From NCBI RefSeq assembly GCF_006345805.1, contig NC_042999.1, forward strand, positions 118,358,001 through 118,422,000: DNA of 64,000 bases, written 5' to 3'. The translations under genes were made by a program, and so were the position numbers. Every line of letters starts with the position of its first letter. The stretch's first letter is position 1. Positions 10,021-60,803 of the stretch are shown here, in pieces. Origin of the DNA: Octopus sinensis. Its lineage: Eukaryota. The notes below the pieces were generated by a model that saw nothing but the letters and a program-made list of their open reading frames with translations, did not search any database and was not told the origin of the DNA.

Positions 10021-10240
10021 GTCACAGTCATTTGACTGTGGCCATGCCGGAGCACCGCCTTTAGTCGGGCAAATCAACTCCAGGACTTATTCTTTGTAAG
10101 CCTAGTACTTATTCTATTGGTTTCTTTTTGCCGAACTGCTAAGCCACGGTGACGTAAATACACCAGCATCGGTTGTCAAGCGATGTTGGGGGGACAAACA
10201 CAGACACAAAACATATACACACACATACATACACATATAT

Positions 10241-18370: not shown

Positions 18371-19935
18371 TCAGGTCATCCCATAAGTTCTGTCTGGATT
18401 TTGAATAAAGAAAACCAGTGATCAAGTGTTATATTTAATTGAAATTTAATCATCAATGTACTTTCCCTGATTATCTTTGACTTCCTTCCATCTATTTACA
18501 AGCTTTTTAATCCCATCAATGTAAAACTCTTTTGGTTTCAAAGTGAAGAACTCTGAAATGTTAGTTTCGAATTCCTCCTGGGTTGCAAAAGTTATGTCCC
18601 CCAAATGATTCTGTAAACTACAAAACAAATGGTAGTCTGAAGGAGCAAGGTCGAGAGAATAAGGTGCATGAGGAATTTTTTCCCAACCAAGCTCTTCAAT
18701 CTTCGGTGATGTGATCTTTGCAGTGTGAGGTCGTGCATTGTTCTGATGAAACATTACTCCTTTTTGATTCACTAAAGCGGGTCATTTTTTTCTTCAAAGC
18801 TTGGTTCAAACACTCTAATTGCTGACAGTAGACTTGAGCATTAATTGTTGCATTAGATGGTAACAATTCAAAGTGATTTACTTCTTTGCAATCCCATTAG
18901 ATAGAGAGAAGAACCTTTTTCCCATGAAGTTCCATTCTCAGTTGTGTTTGAGCTTTTTCCCTTTTACCAAGCCACTGTTTACAATGTTTAACATGTTGAT
19001 AAAAGATCCATTTTTCATCATCAGTCACAAGTCTATCCAAAAAGGGTGAAATGAGTTTGTAAGAATGGAGAGAAGAGCAAATGTCAACTTGGGATTCGCA
19101 GTTGCTTTCGGACAATTAATGTGGCATCCATTTTCCAAGTTTAGGAACCTTTCCATGTTGTTGAAGATGAAGATGAACAGTTGTATGGTTTGAACTAAAT
19201 TTTATTGCCAATTCTTCAACTGATAATGTAGGATTTTCTTCAAGTAATGCCTCAAGGAGTTTATCATCAAACTCAACTGGACGTCCTGTTTGATCTTCAT
19301 CTTCAAGGCTGAAATCTCCACTTCTGAATTTTGCAAACCAGCTTCTGCAAGTTCTTTCATTCAAGCATTCTTTCCTATAAACTGAGTCACTTCGGCTGCA
19401 GAGTTTCCATTTTTGTACTCATAAAGCATTGTGTGCCTCAAATGTTCTTTGGATACCTCCATGTTAGAAAGGGTTTTAATCAAAGAAATTTTACTCCTAT
19501 TATTCTGTAAAATAATATTTAATTATATTTCGTTTTTGGATTTGGTTTGCAAGATTCTTTATATGAGTTCGTGTGTTGCAGAATATTCTGTTGTGTCTGG
19601 GGAGAGTCATTTTCTTTTTGTGCCTTATAACACACTCACCAGTAAAATTTCCACTTTTTTCTTATTCAAAACTATTGAGAAGGTTGCAAGATGCAACGAA
19701 AATTTTAGGAAAATAAAAATAAGAAAAAAATTGGAAATTTTACCGGTGAGTGTGTTATATTATAAGGCACAAAAAGAAAATGACTCTCCCCAGACACAAC
19801 AAAATATTTAATTAGTTTAAATGTATCCAAATGCATAAAAATAATTTTTAATTCCATTAGACATTCTAAAATGCTATTAAATTTCATTTAATTTTAAGAA
19901 AGGTAAAATTGGCCAGAACTTTTGGGGTGACCTGA
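18371..19935 (-). mobile_element. Full-length inactive mariner (Tc1/mariner, D,D34D-type) transposon
   Basis: TA target duplication; TIRs TCAGGTCATCCCATAAGTTCTG and TCAGGTCACCCCAAAAGTTCTG; broken transposase from about 19462 to 18446 with an HTH (ERTCRSWFAKFRSG), WMPH (WVPHEL), VTDDEKW, HQNNARPH and YSLDLAPSDYHLF. Confidence 0.97.
19581..19808. repeat. ~87-bp inverted repeat within the mariner 5' region
   Basis: ttgtgtctggggagagtcattttctttttgtgccttata...cttatt (19581-19666) versus its reverse complement at 19718-19808. Confidence 0.9.
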
Positions 19936-24566: not shown

Positions 24567-25043
24567 TTATTCTATGAGTCTGCCTTCAGCTTCCAAGAAT
24601 GCTTCAGTGTAGGACTGGAATCAATGACATGCTTGCACTAAATGCTGCTTATTCATTTCATACAAAAACTGGACACTGGCAACCTTTATTGAAATTATGG
24701 TATTGTGAGGATGTCAGCTAGTCTCACTTTCACAAATGCCTGAAGGCAGTAGTCCTGGGGAATTAAATATCATAAATTTGGAGGACACAAGTGTTGCATG
24801 ATTGTAAATATTGCCTGACATTCATTCTTGAATTACATGGGCTTTGTGAGAAGGTGCTGAGTCTTGTTGAAACATGTTTGGCCTTCCACTGTATACCTCA
24901 TCTATTCAGGGCTTAATAATGTCCTCCAACTTCTCAATGTACCCAGCCATATTATTTCTAAGAGTTGGTGGAAAGATGTGAGGTAGCATGATATGACCTT
25001 TGTTATTCATCGCTCCTAGAACCATCACAGTTACTGGAAACTT
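24567..25043 (-). mobile_element. DD37D (maT-type) Tc1/mariner transposase remnant
   Basis: In-frame translation with stops: KFPVTVMVLGAMNNKGHIMLPHIFP..YIEKLEDIIKP*IDEVYSGRPNMFQQDSAPSHKA...HPHNT...EAEGRLIE*. Confidence 0.85.
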
Positions 25044-25450
25044 TACAATTAGCATGTGATAATTGTAAAGGAGTGTCACTGTCATAGTAGCAGTGTCATT
25101 AATTTCTAATATTCTGCAAAACCATGACTAGCATTGGGTAAATATTACCTGGCTTGGAAACAGTTGAGGATTGGAAACTGGTAGGGTATACAGCTATAGA
25201 AAATCTGTCTTTTATGAACTCCATCTGACCCATGCAAACATAGAAAAGAAGGATGACAATGACACATAGTGACACCTGTATACTTTCCTAATCCAAAAGT
25301 TTAGAGCTAATAGCATATTTAAATCATACATCAATTGTTAAATTTCTTAAATGCTATTATTATTATGTAAAGTATAGAAGCCATTTTATCATGGCTAACC
25401 ACATTGGGGAGGGGGTTGTTACTGTAGCTTTATAGCCCCAAGAGATCTTC

Positions 25451-25517
25451 GTTTTTCTAATGGCGTCTGCCACTGATGTCGTTTTTCGACATCAGTGGCA
25501 GACGCCATTAGAAAAAC
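25451..25517. repeat. Perfect 31-bp hairpin with a T5 loop
   Basis: gtttttctaatggcgtctgccactgatgtcg-ttttt-cgacatcagtggcagacgccattagaaaaac. Confidence 0.97.
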
Positions 25518-25568
25518 TTATATCTGTTTGCAAAGGAGCCTTCACTTTCATCGCTACCTGGTGGTTGC

Positions 25569-25611
25569 CGCCCGTTGACGAGGGACAAACATCCCGAAAC
25601 TTGTTCGAGCG
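25569..25611 (+). ncRNA. Minimal type I hammerhead-like motif (U3 variant) at the apex of the foldback
   Basis: cgcccg-TTGACGA-ggga(caaaca)tccc-GAA-ACTTGT-T-cgagcg: stem I 5 of 6 pairs, stem II 4 bp, near-palindromic stem III; predicted cut after 25605. Confidence 0.6.
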
Positions 25612-26160
25612 TATCACTCAGGCTTGCGAGGAAGGGATGGCCTCCCTTTGCAAATACTCCAAAGACACAGATATTGTGTTTAGAGCCAGCTAGAGACGAA
25701 GATCTCTTGGGGCTATAAAGCTACAGTAACAACCCCCTCCCCAATGTGGTTAGCCATGATAAGATGGCTTCTATACTTTACATTATCGAGCAATTACTGT
25801 TTCAATCTCATTCTGAGATTTAATTATGCCTATTATTATTATATTATTATTATATTATTATGATGATAAGGAGATATCCTATTCATTGTTCCTATATCCC
25901 TTTCCTTATATTTCCATTTCCATTTATATTTTTGATTTTTAATATTTTTCATTTTGCTTTTGTTTTTTGTTTTTCCCTTCTTCAAATTGTACTTATATCA
26001 TTTACTCTATCACCCTTTTTAAGAATTATATTTTAGTCTTCTTATTGCTGCTTTAGTTTTGGACTATATTGTAATCTTAGTCTTTTTGTTACTTTACTTG
26101 TTTTAGTTTATTTGTGATTCCTGATTTCCAGTTTTAACTATTACTGTCATAATAATCCAC

Positions 26161-32564: not shown

Positions 32565-34010
32565 AGCAAAATGGAAAGAACCTGGCATGGATGGAGTACA
32601 AGATTATTGGCTGAGAATTTTACAGTTGCATGAATGTATCACTGCACACCTTGATGAATGTCTGCAGTAGTGTCATGTCCCTAACTGGATGACCAATGGA
32701 AAAACATTGTTATGTCTGAAGGATCTCTTGAAAGGTGAATTGGGATCAAATTTTGACCTATGACCTCTTTACCACTGTTGTGGAAGCTTATAACCTCTGT
32801 TTTTGCAGAAAATTATATAATCATCTGGAAAGTAACAATCAAAAAGAATGCAGGAAGCAAAGTAAAGCAAAAAAAGACTGCATTTTAGTTGATAAAATGT
32901 TAATTAGAAATTTTAGATACAGATTGACAGAAATAAATGTATCATGGCTAAATTACAGAAAAGCATATAACATGCTACCGAACAGTTGGATGAATAAAAC
33001 AATGAGCATGTTTGGAGTGGAAGAAAATATAGAGAAAATGGTAAATGAAAGTATGAAACACTAGAATACTGAACTGATTGAAGGAAAACAGACTGGAGAA
33101 AGTGAACATCAGACTTGGTATATTTGAAGGTGTTAGTTTATCCACATTATTATTTGCATTGGCCATGATGCCATCAGTTTGATATTATGAGAAGCTAAAA
33201 ATAGCTTGTGATTTGGGAAAAGGATATGGTCAGATAAATCATCTCCTTTTTATGGAGGATTTCAAGCTTTATGTAATAAATGAGAAGCAGCATGAAAGTC
33301 TTGTACATACTGTCTGTATTTTCTCAGATGATGTAAGTATGGAATTTGGGATTGAAAAGTGCTATATTGAAAGTAAAATGTGGAAAATTTCGTAGAAGCC
33401 CGGGAATTGAAATGCCAAATGGACAAAAAAATGAAGTCAGTCAACAAGGGACTGTGGTATAAGTATTTGGAGGAAGATGAAATAAAACATGAAGAGATGA
33501 AGCAAATTATAAGTAGGGATTATACAAGGAGAGTCAAAGTTGAATTCAAAAAATGTTATTGAAACAATAAATTCAAGAACAGTACTGGTTATCAGATATG
33601 GAATTGGAATTGTAGATTCAACCAAAAGCAACATACAGAAATTTGACAGAAAAGTTAGAAAGCTGTTGGCAATGTATGGAGCTGATATTAACTGGTTGTA
33701 CTTGAAGAGAGATCAGGATGGAAGAGGCTTAGTTGCTGTGGAAGTGTATGTAGAGATGATAAAAAAGCCTACAAGTTTACAGAACAGAACAGAGAAATTA
33801 CTAAAAGCAGGGAATAAGGAACAGGTGATGAAGTGTGAAATAGGAGAAAAGGACCAAAAGGAAATTCAAAAAGAGCATATTAAACAGACTGTAGAGAAAC
33901 CTTTACATGATCAGTTGTAGAAAGCCACTGAGGATGTATGCAGAACAAAAACCTGGGCTTGATTGAGAAAAAGGGCAATTAAAAAAAGAACAGAGGGCCC
34001 TATTAGAGCA
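32565..34010 (+). mobile_element. R4/Dong-like (R2-group) non-LTR retrotransposon reverse transcriptase remnant
   Basis: Frameshifted RT motifs: WKEPGMDGVQDYWL, SWLNYRKAYNMLPNSW, GIFEGVSLSTLLF, INHLLFMEDFKLY (MDDLKLY), TINSRTVLVIRYG, LYLKRDQDGRGL. Confidence 0.88.
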
Positions 34011-44300: not shown

Positions 44301-44774
44301 CTTAGATAGATAAACCCTAACTCACCATTATCCATTAGCTACCCTCACCTTGTTTAGCCCACTAGTTGAAGTGGTTTCCTGGATTCTAACCAACATTGCA
44401 TGCAAACAGTTACTTGGAGCCATAAGTGCCAGGTGGAGACCAAAGTGGACTAACCACCCCTAAGAGTGAAACATTTCCCCTGTCAATACACAGAGTGAAT
44501 TGTCATCTGAGAGGTAATGGATAGAAAGTCAGAAATTCCAGTGAGGAACTATAAGGAGACACTAATCATCTGTGAAGATAAAGCAGCCATTATGTATGTA
44601 CATATGTTTATATGTAACAGTAGGGATAAGCAATTTAGGCTGATCGATATATAAAGTATATTAAATACACGAAATATAAAAAAAATGTATATATGTATAC
44701 ATATATAAAGGTCTGACTTACACAGAAAGCAAATGATATAGAAAATTAAAGGGGATGAGGAACAATATTACAAA

Positions 44775-44866: not shown

Positions 44867-46072
44867 AGAGATCCTACATTTGAGGTGTTAAAGGAAATAA
44901 GTCCAAAAATTGAATGTATTTCATGTATTTAATATACTTTATATATCGATCTGTTTAAATTCCTTATTCCTACATTCACTTCTATATCCGCTCCAGTTTA
45001 AATCTCTTGAACACTACTGTATATTCTATACCGAGAACACTCAGATCATGTCTATGAACTATATGTTTATATATGCATATATGTGTGTATGTATTTAGCT
45101 ATATATATATGAAGCATTGATAAGACAGCATGGTTTAGAGCATGGGTGACAGACGAAAGTTCTAGCTTACTGTGCTCTTCCAGATGGATAGGTCTACACA
45201 CTTCACCCTCTTCTGTCACCTTAGGACTTTCAGTAGATGTCTTATATATCACCATCTTTTTCATTACATTGGTTTTTAGTTAGCGTTAATTTCAGTATAT
45301 TTCTGTCTCTTTCCAGCAACTTCTCACATTCCTTCATTTATCGTGGTTCAACCTTTATTTCACGTATTTCCAGCATTTCCATGTCTATCCCTTTTCCAGT
45401 TTCAGCCACATAACTGTGGCCACCTGCTGTTGCTTTCTCCAATTTTCCCACAAATACAATAACAATAGCAACAATTTGAACAGTAATAATCAATCAAACA
45501 GATATTTAACACTACGACTTATGACAAAAACAACTCATTTTGAACTCATGGCTATATGGTTAGGAAAATAATCTATGAAGAAAAAAGGAAAGGAAAAGAA
45601 GAAAAGAGGAATGAAAAACATATATTCTATGAATATCTTGTAAACTGTAATTATTTTTTCATCTATAAAAAATATTTCGCTTCATAAAATATTTAATTTA
45701 GTTTAATTTGCTTCAGGTTATATCTTACTAACAGTTTCTAATAAGAAAGAAATGATGCAATCCATGATTACCTAGTGACCAGAAATTTTATGATCTTTGT
45801 CACATGTAAGAAAACATATTTAACATATATTTTATGCATCTTCTTTCTGGGTCTTTCAATTCAAAATTCAAACTATTAATTCTGGCAAGATTTATCTAGG
45901 CATGAATATCTCCCTTATAATACTTGGCAGTCGAGGCACACCACATATTTCAACAATGTTTAAACATTCCAGTTATATGAATGTGTGAATGTGCATAGGT
46001 TACACACACACACATGTACGCACAACAAAAACTCAAATTATCTGAGTCACAGAGTAACTTGCTTTGACTCAT

Positions 46073-52980: not shown

Positions 52981-53308
52981 ATATATATATAAAATTAGAA
53001 AAAAACACCCTTTATCAATTGAATAATGAAAAATTAAATTATACCATTTAGAAAATTACATATAGAAAGATTAAATATAAGATAAAACATATAACAATGA
53101 TATATTAAAATGTATATATTTGGTATATATTTTATATACCAAATATATACGTATTATTTATTATTTTGCATATTAATTAATCATTGTTATATGTTTTATC
53201 ATATATTTAATCATATATTTTATCATATATTTCTATAATATGTAATTTTTCTAAATGATAGAATTTAATTTTTCATTATTGAATTGATAAAGGGTGTTTT
53301 TTTTTCTA

Positions 53309-58345: not shown

Positions 58346-59116
58346 TGTACCTATGTATCTTTTTTTTCTTTTTTGGTTAAGATTCCAAATGCTACTTAGA
58401 ATAATATTTTGCTCTCGGGAACAAGTAACAAGCAGTTCTGAGATTGGTAGTTACTTGCAAATAAGAGAATACCTTCTGTAGAGAACTATTTCTCTTTCAT
58501 CTGTTTAATACTATAGAAACATGCATTAAGCCATAATCTATGGCCATAAAGCTTCTGAAATGTATTAATACATACTTCTGCATATAGATTGTCTGTGTTT
58601 ACAGACAGAGTATATTATTACAGGAAGCCGTAAGGATTACAGAATTGCAGCGTTTAGGATTGTACTTTTTTTTAATATACATTTTATGCAGTTAAGTTAC
58701 TGATATTTAACCCTAGATCTGCTCAGCCAATCTATGATCAAAAGACATTCCATCTGTGAACATGCTTTTTTTTATGGATAATGTATCTAAAATCATGATA
58801 TCTACCTTTTTAAAATGGTAAAGTGTGGTCTGAGGGAAACTTTGCTATTTTTGGTTTGCCTTCAATTAGAATGATATAGATATGTTGATTACCATTTTAT
58901 ATCCATATTTCCATGATCAGATTCCTCTCATCCTGGCATTAAACCTTTTAATGACCTCATAGGACAAGCAAGATCAGGGAGTGCCTATTGTAAAACCAGA
59001 ATATATACAGCTTGGAAAGACAGCAATGGAAGATGTAGATTATTGGGTCAGAATAGATCAGAACTCGTCTGCTTAGAAATTTGGGATTTGTACTCTTTTA
59101 GTATAATGATGTGTAT

Positions 59117-60803
59117 CATCATCAGCATCATCATCATCATTTAACGTCCGCTTTCCATGCTAGCATGGGTTGCACGGTTCAACTGGGGTCTGGGGAGCCC
59201 GAAAGCTGCACCAGTCCAGTCAGATCTGGCAGTGTTTCTACAGCTGGATGCCCTTCCTAACGCCAACCACTCCGAGAGTGTAGTGGGTGATTTTATGTGC
59301 CACCGACACAGGTGCCAGACGAGGCTGGCAGACGGCCACGCTCGGATGGTGTTTTTTATGTGCCACCGACACAGGTGCCAGACGAGGCTGGCAGACGGCC
59401 ACGCTCGGATGGTGTTTTTATGTGCCACCGACACAGGTGCCAGATGAGGCTGGCAAATGGCCACGATCGGATGGTGTTTGTTACGTGCCCACAGCACGGA
59501 GGCCGGTCGATGCGGTACTGGCTACGGCCACGTTCGGATGGTTTTCTTGTGTGCCACGTGCCACCGGCACTGGTACCACAAAGATACAAATTCCATTGAT
59601 GTTCATCTATTTTGATTTGTTTTGATTTTCACTTGCCTCAACAGGTCTTCACAAGTGTCACAAGAAGGAAGGTATGCACAGGTGGACTGACTACGTCCCA
59701 GGTAGGGGCCACAGGTTATGGCCTGACTAGTCTTGCCGGGTCTTCGGATGGTGTTTTTACGTGCCACCGACACAGGTGCCAGATGAGGCTGGCGAACGGC
59801 CACGATCGGATGGTGTTTGTTATGTGCCCACAGCACGGAGGCCAGTTGATGCGGTACTGGCTAGGGCCACGTTCGGATGGTTTTCTTGTGTGCCACCGGC
59901 ACTGGTACCACAAAGATACAATTCCATTAATGTTCATCTATTTTGATTTGTTTTGATTTGATTTGATTTGATTTGTTTTGATTTCATTTTGATTTTCACT
60001 TGCCTCAACAGGCCTTCACAAGTATCACAAGGAGGAAGGTATGCACAGGTGGACTGACTACGTCCCAGGTAGGGGCCATGGGATATGGCCTGACTAGTCT
60101 TGCCGGGTCTTCGGATGGTGTTTTTATGTGCCACCGACACAGGTGCTAGATGAGGCTGGTGAACGGCCACGATCGGATGGTGTTATGTGCCCACAGCACG
60201 TTGGCCAGTCGATGCGGTACTGACTACGGCCACGTTTGGATGGATTTCTTGTGTGCCACAGGCACTGGTACCACACAGATACAAATTCCATTGATGTTCA
60301 TCTATTTTGATTTGTTTTGATTTGATTTGATTTGATTTGTTTTGATTTCATTTTGATTTTCACTTGCCTCAACAGGCCTTCACAAGTATCACAAGGAGGA
60401 AGGTATGCACAGGTGGACTGACTACGTCCCAGGTAGGGGCCATGGGATATGGCCTGACTAGTCTTGCCGGGTCTTCGGATGGTGTTTTTATGTGCCACCG
60501 ACACAGGTGCTAGATGAGGCTGGTGAACGGCCACGATCGGATGGTGTTATGTGCCCACAGCACGTTGGCCAGTCGATGCGGTACTGACTACGGCCACGTT
60601 TGGATGGATTTCTTGTGTGCCACAGGCACTGGTACCACACAGATACAAATTCCATTGATGTTCATCTATTTTGATTTGATTTGATTTTCACTTGCCTCAA
60701 CAGGTCTTCACAAGTGTCACAAGAAGGAAGGTATTCACAGGTAGACTGACTAGTCTTGCCGGGTCTTCGGAAGGTGTTTTTATGTGCTACCGACACAGGT
60801 GCC
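59117..60803 (-). mobile_element. RTE-tailed SINE whose 5' part has expanded into a higher-order tandem array
   Basis: Tail at 59117-59295; ~62-bp unit x3 (59295, 59358, 59420); higher-order units start at 59420, 59759, 60126, 60490 and 60782. Confidence 0.9.

What the first reader, a model, noticed from the sequence alone, without database searches (positions are those of the whole stretch)
25366..25782. TIR-bounded foldback element whose internal rod ends in a hammerhead ribozyme
Seen: 87-bp TIRs with one mismatch and a TTA duplication (a PIF/Harbinger-like DNA-transposon signature). Inside, 25520-25574 pairs with 25606-25675 as an imperfect rod (atatctg/cagatat, tttgcaaaggag/ctccctttgcaaa, gcc/ggc, tcgc/gcga, cctggtggt/atcactcagg, cgcccg/cgagcg). 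The apex of the rod is a minimal type I hammerhead, TTGACGA-ggga(caaaca)tccc-GAA-ACTTGT-T, present on the + strand only. Established: hammerheads of this type belong to Penelope-like retroelements and retrozymes; I know of none described in MITEs. Inference: either a DNA MITE that captured a ribozyme, or a viroid-like self-cleaving retroelement with inverted termini that only mimics a MITE. U3 instead of C3 weakens the 3-8 pair, so this copy may be impaired.
Basis: partly seen in the sequence, partly recalled or inferred. Interest (0 to 1): 0.88.

Follow-up and report, generated by a model that had tools for sequence, protein, structure and literature searches.

The report
MITE-like element with degenerate hammerhead-like tip
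A young 417-bp inverted-repeat transposon, probably in an octopus genome, carries a sequence built like an animal hammerhead ribozyme but with three defects, so it is most likely a dead ribozyme relic riding in a DNA transposon and not a working ribozyme.

Summary
The described anatomy is real. There are 87-nt terminal inverted repeats with one mismatch (25366-25452 / 25696-25782), flanked by TTA on both sides. Inside are a near-perfect 31-bp hairpin (25451-25517) and an imperfect ~150-nt rod (z = -4.2). The tip of the rod (25569-25611, + strand) reads CGCCCG-UUGACGA-GGGA(CAAACA)UCCC-GAA-AC(UU)GU-U-CGAGCG.

This matches the canonical metazoan type I hammerhead layout better than the Penelope "minimal" variant. 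Helix I has 6 bp, helix II has 4 bp with a 6-nt loop, and helix III is tiny. My descriptor expects 0.005-0.0075 such sites per shuffled window.

Rfam support is weak. There is no hit at gathering score. Hammerhead_HH9 reaches 21.6 bits (cut-off 52), and only when 71 nt are searched.

The motif has three defects. U3 replaces C3 with no A8 compensation. Helix III has a 2-nt, non-palindromic loop. Helix I has a C·A mismatch.

No second copy, tandem unit, transposase, RT or protein homologue was found in the window or in any searchable collection. Family consensus, empty sites and covariation are therefore untested.

Best reading: a non-autonomous DNA transposon carrying a passenger relic of a retrozyme/Penelope-type hammerhead. 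Chance resemblance remains a serious rival.

The parts
25363..25365 (.). TTA, left copy of the putative 3-bp target-site duplication (last unit of an (ATT)n tract)
   Evidence: sequence read directly
25366..25452 (+). left terminal inverted repeat, 87 nt, starts TGTAAAGTATAG
   Evidence: 98.85% complementary to 25696-25782
25451..25517 (.). hairpin A: 31 perfect base pairs (25451-25481 / 25487-25517) around a TTTTT loop; origin unknown (snap-back synthesis or a nested palindrome)
   Evidence: I2; alignments
25520..25675 (+). rod B: imperfect inverted repeat, 50% G+C, whose tip is the hammerhead-like motif
   Evidence: z = -4.17; G+C
25569..25611 (+). hammerhead-like motif: helix I 25569-25574/25606-25611 (C·A mismatch at 25572/25608), core UUGACGA 25575-25581 (U3 at 25575), helix II 25582-25585/25592-25595 with loop CAAACA, GAA 25596-25598, helix III AC/GU 25599-25600/25603-25604 with loop UU, U17 at 25605; predicted scissile bond between 25605 and 25606
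25557..25625 (+). extent of the Rfam Hammerhead_HH9 alignment, including the helix I internal loop (UUGC / UA) and distal helix I (GGUGG / UCACU)
   Evidence: 21.6 bits, gathering score 52
25676..25695 (.). 20-nt spacer between the rod and the right TIR
25696..25782 (-). right terminal inverted repeat, 87 nt
25783..25785 (.). TTA, right copy of the putative target-site duplication

Best explanation
A recently inserted non-autonomous cut-and-paste DNA transposon (a MITE or foldback-type element). Inferred mechanism: a transposase encoded elsewhere moves it by recognising the 87-nt TIRs and duplicates a TTA target.

Its 243-nt interior is non-coding cargo made of two hairpins. The tip of the second hairpin is a relic of a canonical metazoan type I hammerhead, the class found in non-LTR retrozymes, satellite transcripts and Penelope-like terminal repeats. 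The most likely origin is filler DNA picked up from such a repeat during gap repair or template switching.

The relic already carried its defects when this copy inserted. It plays no part in transposition and is catalytically dead or nearly so. If the + strand were transcribed, the RNA would fold mainly into an 87-bp perfect duplex, which would be a substrate for small-RNA pathways and not a self-cleaving circle.

Shown: the anatomy, the motif and its defects, and the absence of coding capacity and tandem units. Inferred: mobility by a transposase, hammerhead ancestry and inactivity.
For: TIRs of 87 nt with 1 mismatch and TTA on both sides. G+C is 46% against 28-36% in the flanks, so the element is foreign to its surroundings. 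Other foldback elements and mariner/Tc1 remnants lie in the same window.

There is no coding capacity. The six-frame translation has no relative among 5.8e9 proteins. Pfam finds nothing. The only HMMER hit for the 85-codon frame is a repeat-inflated match to a bacterial Calx-beta protein.

Hammerhead likeness: 12 of 13 invariant core positions, G10.1-C11.1, helix I 6 bp, helix II 4 bp, loop 2 CAAACA against HH9 CAAAAA, and helix I internal loop UUGC/UA against UUAC/UAC. This is the layout given for canonical metazoan type I hammerheads (PMC4209133). The descriptor expects 0.005-0.0075 sites per window. The HH9 E-value rescaled to one family over the window is about 2e-4 (my arithmetic). The open-core fold lies only 1.7 kcal/mol above the MFE.

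Relic status: U3 pairs with an unchanged G8, whereas natural variants covary to U3-A8 (PMC3088659). The helix III loop has 2 nt, and its dimer duplex is -2.9 kcal/mol against about -8 for a palindromic version. With TIRs only 1.1% diverged, three defects in 43 nt are unlikely to have arisen since insertion (inference).

There is no tandem partner to supply a second ribozyme. Solo retrozyme monomers are known to exist (bioRxiv 10.64898/2026.07.22.740005).
Against: Only one copy is available, so the TSD, mobility and family consensus are untested. The TTA could be a coincidence next to an (ATT)n tract. The TIR terminus TGTAAAG is not one I can assign to PIF/Harbinger or any other superfamily.

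Rfam support is far below the gathering score (21.6 against 52 bits; 13.9 bits for the bare motif). A score of 21.6 bits would be reached about 9 times by chance in a 2.7-Gb genome (my arithmetic). Helix I comes free at the tip of any palindrome. I have no evidence that this genome holds canonical type I hammerhead families: none in the window, and I did not run an Rfam scan on the one 24.5-kb Octopus bimaculoides locus fetched (only BLAST of the element and window against it).
Confidence: 0.45

Rival explanations
1. Chance resemblance. The element is an ordinary MITE or foldback element whose internal imperfect palindrome happens to end in a sequence close to the hammerhead consensus, with no ribozyme ancestry.
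For: No Rfam hit at gathering score over the window, and none in the 551-nt E-value search. The best score is 21.6 bits, less than half the cut-off, and 13.9 bits for the bare motif. C3, one of the invariant positions, is wrong. Helix III is not formable as a monomer. Helix I is supplied automatically by the palindrome. In the MFE the core GACGA pairs with UUGUU. The site was picked out by eye in a scan of many windows. No relative of the 26-nt core was found in two collections.
Against: The descriptor expectation is 0.005-0.0075 per window. The peripheral features that the descriptor does not use also agree with HH9: a 6-nt loop 2 CAAA-A, exactly 6 bp in helix I followed by UU-C / UA, and a continuing distal helix. 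These add about 8 bits. Each of the three defects is one substitution away from the canonical state.
Confidence: 0.3
2. A retroelement and not a DNA transposon. A heavily 5'-truncated Penelope-like or retrozyme-type insertion has an inverted 87-nt 5'-truncated copy at its upstream side. The 'TIRs' are then two copies of the element's 3' end, and the hammerhead belongs to the sense strand of the terminal region.
For: Penelope-like elements often carry an inverted 5'-truncated copy that produces flanking inverted repeats. They prefer microsatellite targets and carry hammerheads near their 3' ends (PMC8557442). Here the insertion abuts an (ATT)n tract and the motif is on one strand only. Animal retrozymes are related to Penelope terminal repeats and occur as solo monomers.
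Against: No RT or GIY-YIG sequence lies in or near the element. The motif lies outside the repeated termini, whereas in Penelope-like elements it lies within them. The ends are precise, with a symmetric 3-nt flank. The longer flanking direct repeat (25334-25366 / 25810-25842) is only 73% identical and offset by 27 nt, which is too diverged to be a TSD of an insertion whose arms differ by 1%. The layout is the canonical type I form and not the Penelope min-HHR with a 7-8-bp helix II.
Confidence: 0.15
3. Functional ribozyme cargo. This is a MITE family that carries a working type I hammerhead. It would be active as a U3 variant or in trans/dimer form, or this copy would be a mutated member of an active family. 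The ribozyme would process transcripts of the element.
For: The open-core fold is only 1.7 kcal/mol above the MFE, and helices I and II have 0.7-0.9 pairing probability. The rod plus terminal hammerhead is the arrangement seen in viroid-like and retrozyme RNAs (PMC7229834). Short-helix-III hammerheads are known to work as dimers.
Against: U3 is not compensated at G8. The helix III dimer is weak, at -2.9 kcal/mol. There is no second ribozyme within reach. The 87-bp perfect duplex would dominate the RNA fold. The near-identical TIRs imply the defects were already in the source copy.
Confidence: 0.07

Closest known systems
Canonical metazoan type I hammerhead ribozymes (Rfam Hammerhead_HH9 RF02275 / Hammerhead_1; Schistosoma Sm-alpha, amphibian satellite 2, non-LTR retrozymes)
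   Same: Type I topology with helix I open. The core UGANGA...GAA...A15.1/U16.1-H17 is present, with G10.1-C11.1. Helix I has 6 bp followed by an internal loop and a distal helix. Helix II has 4 bp with a 6-nt loop CAAACA, and helix III is very short.
   Different: U3 replaces C3 with G8 unchanged. The helix III loop is 2 nt and not palindromic. Helix I has a C·A mismatch. The score is 21.6 bits against a gathering score of 52. The motif is a single unit and not a tandem array, and it sits between 87-nt inverted repeats.
Non-LTR retrozymes of animals (Cervera and de la Pena 2020, PMC7229834)
   Same: A rod-like unit of about 156-179 nt with a type I hammerhead at one end. The size is within the reported 170-400 nt range. 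Solo monomers are known.
   Different: No tandem repeat. No evidence of circular RNA. The unit is embedded in a TIR-bounded element with a 3-nt flank, which is not part of retrozyme anatomy.
MITEs of the PIF/Harbinger (Tourist-like) type
   Same: Small size, no coding capacity, terminal inverted repeats, TTA (TWA) on both sides, and foldback potential.
   Different: The TIRs are unusually long (87 nt). The terminus TGTAAAG could not be matched to the superfamily. No other copies and no transposase partner were found, so the assignment rests on a 3-nt flank in one copy.
Penelope-like elements with inverted 5'-truncated copies (PMC8557442)
   Same: Inverted terminal repeats, a microsatellite target, and a hammerhead on the sense strand near the 3' end.
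   Different: No RT or endonuclease remnant. The motif lies outside the repeated termini. It has the canonical hammerhead layout and not the min-HHR layout. The symmetric ends are precise.

Membership tests
Hammerhead ribozyme (type I) | Conserved core C3-U4-G5-A6-N7-G8-A9 | tested here: not met
   The core reads U-U-G-A-C-G-A at 25575-25581. Position 3 is U and G8 is unchanged, so there is no U3-A8 compensation.
Hammerhead ribozyme (type I) | G12-A13-A14, the A15.1-U16.1 pair, and H17 at the cleavage site | tested here: met
   GAA at 25596-25598, A at 25599, U at 25604, U at 25605.
Hammerhead ribozyme (type I) | Three helices around the core: helix I open, helices II and III closed | tested here: inconclusive
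   Helix I (5 of 6 pairs) and helix II (4 bp) form with probability 0.7-0.9. Helix III would be 2 bp on a 2-nt loop, which cannot close. Only A15.1-U16.1 on a CUUG loop, or a weak dimer (-2.9 kcal/mol), is possible.
Hammerhead ribozyme (type I) | Reaches the curated Rfam gathering score | tested here: not met
   No hit over the window at gathering. HH9 scores 21.6 bits against 52 when 71 nt are searched, and 13.9 bits on 49 nt.
Hammerhead ribozyme (type I) | Core conserved and helices covarying among related copies | not testable with these tools
   No other copy in the window or in the searchable collections. None of those collections holds animal genomes as searchable DNA.
Hammerhead ribozyme (type I) | Site-specific self-cleavage | not testable with these tools
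   Needs in vitro transcription or RNA end mapping.
MITE / PIF-Harbinger-like non-autonomous DNA transposon | Terminal inverted repeats | tested here: met
   87 nt, 1 mismatch.
MITE / PIF-Harbinger-like non-autonomous DNA transposon | 3-bp TWA target-site duplication | tested here: inconclusive
   TTA lies on both sides. This is one copy only, and the left TTA is part of an (ATT)n tract. No empty site was available.
MITE / PIF-Harbinger-like non-autonomous DNA transposon | Small size and no coding capacity | tested here: met
   417 bp. No Pfam domain and no protein relative in any frame.
MITE / PIF-Harbinger-like non-autonomous DNA transposon | Multicopy family sharing termini with an autonomous transposase-encoding element | not testable with these tools
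   No second copy in 64 kb or in one 24.5-kb Octopus bimaculoides locus. No collection of animal genomes can be searched by DNA.
Non-LTR retrozyme | Tandem repeats of a 170-400-nt unit, each with a type I hammerhead | tested here: not met
   Single unit. No tandem repeat of that period and no second motif.
Non-LTR retrozyme | Expressed as linear and circular RNA | not testable with these tools
   No transcriptome data can be reached.
Penelope-like element | RT plus GIY-YIG ORF or its remnant | tested here: not met
   The six-frame translation of the element has no relative. Pfam finds nothing in ORFs of 45 aa or more between 23.4 and 26.9 kb.
Penelope-like element | Hammerhead located within the terminal repeats (pLTRs) | tested here: not met
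   The only motif lies in the unique interior and not in the 87-nt arms.

The most novel reading that the evidence does not exclude
A family of cut-and-paste DNA transposons that carries a working retrozyme-type hammerhead. The self-cleaving, potentially circularising RNA module would then have a DNA-level vehicle independent of Penelope-like reverse transcriptases, with this copy being a slightly mutated member.
Probability: 0.07. Interest if true: 0.7.

Novelty: new member of a known kind. Interest (0 to 1): 0.32.

Why it matters
Animal hammerheads have so far been tied to retroelements: Penelope-like elements, retrozymes, and satellite or SINE-like repeats. A full-text search found no paper linking them to MITEs.

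If a MITE family really carried a conserved hammerhead, DNA transposons could spread self-cleaving RNA modules. That would add a second route for their patchy distribution among animals.

As it stands, the evidence fits the commoner case of a transposon carrying a scrap of another repeat. That would only add an example of chimeric repeats and a caution about sub-threshold ribozyme calls at the tips of palindromes.

Tried and rejected
1. Other copies in the window: TIR, core and hairpin probes with up to 3 mismatches, plus blastn at word size 7, found only the element itself.

2. Other copies elsewhere:
- TIR 29-mer in metagenome and viral contigs: 0 hits.
- TIR 25-mer in bacterial and archaeal genomes: 0 hits.
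- Hammerhead 26-mer with Y3 and N7 in metagenome and viral contigs: 0 hits.
- None of these collections is expected to hold cephalopod DNA, so these are weak negatives.

3. Protein route to copies:
- The 77-aa ORF had no candidate.
- The six-frame translation of the whole element had no hit at E <= 10.
- Ten window ORFs are not in the collection.

4. Is the interior a transposase remnant? Rejected.
- The 85-codon frame has no Pfam match.
- Its single hit in 1.84e9 representatives is a bacterial Calx-beta repeat protein, with the score summed over many weak repeats.

5. Long TSD idea: the 33-nt direct repeat 25334-25366 / 25810-25842 is only 73% identical, mostly ATT repeat, and offset 27 nt from the right end. 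Rejected.

6. Sampling the genome through a mariner bait gave one 24.5-kb Octopus bimaculoides locus, with no copy of the element and no empty site.

7. tRNA or SINE origin of the rod: no tRNA-like gene.

8. The microRNA-precursor and scaRNA hits of Rfam on hairpin A are all far below their cut-offs. They are generic matches to a long perfect hairpin.

It was replaced by concatenated ORFs.

Full report
**What is there**

The window is AT-rich (about 32% G+C). It is full of microsatellites, SINE-like repeats, and mariner/Tc1 and LINE remnants, so it is animal nuclear DNA.

An octopus-type SINE 30-mer that I recalled from memory matches 10148-10177 with 2 mismatches. A SINE-like stretch is 80% identical to an Octopus bimaculoides chromosome locus. 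The source is therefore probably an octopod cephalopod. This is an inference and does not affect the rest of the argument.

**Anatomy**

At 25366-25782 lies a 417-bp element with 46% G+C, against 28-36% in its flanks.
- Its ends are 87-nt inverted repeats with one mismatch.
- TTA lies directly outside both ends.
- The left TTA closes an (ATT)n tract, so from one copy the 3-nt duplication is suggestive and not proven.

The interior (243 nt) has two parts.
- Hairpin A has 31 perfect base pairs around a TTTTT loop (25451-25517).
- Rod B is an imperfect inverted repeat (25520-25675), with MFE -61.1 kcal/mol against -43.0 +/- 4.3 for shuffles, z = -4.17.
- A 20-nt spacer precedes the right repeat.

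The whole + strand RNA would fold at -288 kcal/mol, dominated by the 87-bp terminal duplex.

**The hammerhead-like tip**

25569-25611 (+) reads CGCCCG-UUGACGA-GGGA(CAAACA)UCCC-GAA-AC(UU)GU-U-CGAGCG.
- Twelve of the 13 invariant core positions are correct, and G10.1-C11.1 is present.
- Helix I has 6 positions (5 pairs and a C·A mismatch).
- Helix II has 4 bp with a 6-nt loop.
- Helix III is vestigial.

PMC4209133 gives this layout for the canonical metazoan type I hammerhead: helix I 6 bp, helix II 4 bp, helix III 1-2 bp with a 2-4-nt palindromic loop. The Penelope min-HHRs differ, with a helix II of 7-8 bp and a helix I of 4-5 bp. 'Minimal' is therefore not the best label.

**How far above chance**

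- My descriptor finds this one site in the window. It finds 0.005 (Y3) to 0.0075 (N3) sites per dinucleotide-shuffled window, none with C3, and none in 20,000 shuffles of the interior.
- Rfam finds nothing at gathering score over the window and nothing in a 551-nt E-value search, where the filters removed the site.
- When only 71 nt are given, Hammerhead_HH9 aligns over its full length at 21.6 bits (gathering 52), E = 1e-3 for that tiny search.
- The alignment agrees beyond the core: loop 2 is CAAACA against CAAAAA, the helix I internal loop is UUGC/UA against UUAC/UAC, and a distal helix follows.
- On the bare 49-nt motif the score drops to 13.9 bits, so these peripheral features contribute about 8 bits.
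- Rescaling (my arithmetic) gives about 2e-4 expected HH9 hits of that score per window, and about 9 per 2.7-Gb genome.

The resemblance is significant for one window but not for a genome-wide scan. At the tip of a palindrome, helix I comes free.

**Defects**

1. U3 replaces C3. C3 pairs with G8, and natural variants covary to U3-A8 (PMC3088659). Here G8 is unchanged.
2. Helix III (AC-UU-GU) would need a 2-nt hairpin loop, so as a monomer only A15.1-U16.1 on a CUUG loop is possible. As a dimer, ACUUGU pairs with itself at -2.9 kcal/mol, against about -8 kcal/mol for the palindromic ACUAGU or ACAUGU.
3. Helix I has a C·A mismatch.

In the MFE the core GACGA pairs with UUGUU, but the open-core, hammerhead-competent fold is only 1.7 kcal/mol higher.

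Each defect is a single substitution from the canonical state. The two TIRs differ by only 1.1%, so three changes in 43 nt are unlikely to have arisen after this insertion. They were probably already in the source copy (inference).

**What it is not**

- It is not a tandem retrozyme: there is no repeat of the unit and no second motif.
- It encodes nothing recognisable.
  - The 77-aa ORF and the six-frame translation of the whole element have no relatives among 5.8e9 proteins.
  - Pfam is empty for the element and for ORFs between 23.4 and 26.9 kb.
  - The single exhaustive-HMMER hit is a bacterial Calx-beta giant protein whose score is summed over many weak repeats.
- There is no tRNA-like part.

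**Family evidence could not be obtained**

- No other copy is in the window.
- TIR and core probes found nothing in the metagenome, viral or prokaryotic collections.
- Window ORFs are not in the protein collection.
- The one Octopus bimaculoides locus I could fetch has neither a copy nor an empty site.

**Interpretation**

The best-supported reading (0.45) is a young non-autonomous DNA transposon carrying a passenger relic of a retrozyme/Penelope-type hammerhead. The relic would have been acquired as filler DNA and is inactive.

The main rival (0.30) is that the tip of the internal palindrome resembles a hammerhead by chance.

A third reading (0.15) is a Penelope-type retroelement insertion. 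Its inverted 5'-truncated copy would mimic TIRs. That reading fits the microsatellite target and the single-strand motif (PMC8557442). Several things argue against it: the absence of any RT/EN remnant, the motif lying outside the repeated arms, the canonical rather than min-HHR layout, and the clean symmetric ends.

A working ribozyme-bearing MITE family (0.07) is the most novel reading not excluded.

**Novelty**

A full-text search found no paper connecting hammerheads with MITEs. Animal hammerheads are tied to retrozymes and Penelope-like elements. Transposons carrying scraps of other repeats are commonplace, however, and the ribozyme call is sub-threshold. The finding is a modest curiosity unless genome-wide copies show a conserved core.

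Noticed in passing
window 25451-25517: Inside the element there is a near-perfect hairpin of 31 bp with a TTTTT loop. It gives generic sub-threshold microRNA-precursor hits in Rfam. It could be a snap-back synthesis product or a nested palindrome.
   Followed up: partly
window 19582-19630 / 19760-19808: Another small foldback element, with 49-nt inverted repeats (98%) and 129 nt between the arms. It lies next to a mariner-type transposase remnant.
   Followed up: no
window 52999-53055 / 53247-53303: An AT-rich foldback element with 57-nt inverted repeats (95%), embedded in a (TA)n tract. A third, older pair lies at 44609-44676 / 44917-44984 (68 nt, 84%).
   Followed up: no
window 18449-19418 (-): A mariner-type transposase remnant in several frames. 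Its best named relatives are 'SETMAR' proteins of arthropods and of Octopus bimaculoides (65% identity). A Tc1-like fragment also lies at 24909-25127 (-), 240 nt left of the element.
   Followed up: partly
window 59100-60700: A G+C-rich (0.41-0.43) block of SINE-like repeats. It holds internal ~60-nt tandem units and a 364-nt duplicated segment (59937-60182 repeated at 60301-60546). One part is 80% identical to an Octopus bimaculoides locus.
   Followed up: no
window 33513-33917 (+): An ORF fragment resembling the C-terminal part of a LINE-type reverse transcriptase, judged by eye from the translation.
   Followed up: no
window 10148-10177 (-): A match with 2 mismatches to an octopus-type SINE 30-mer recalled from memory. 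This is the basis for guessing a cephalopod source.
   Followed up: partly
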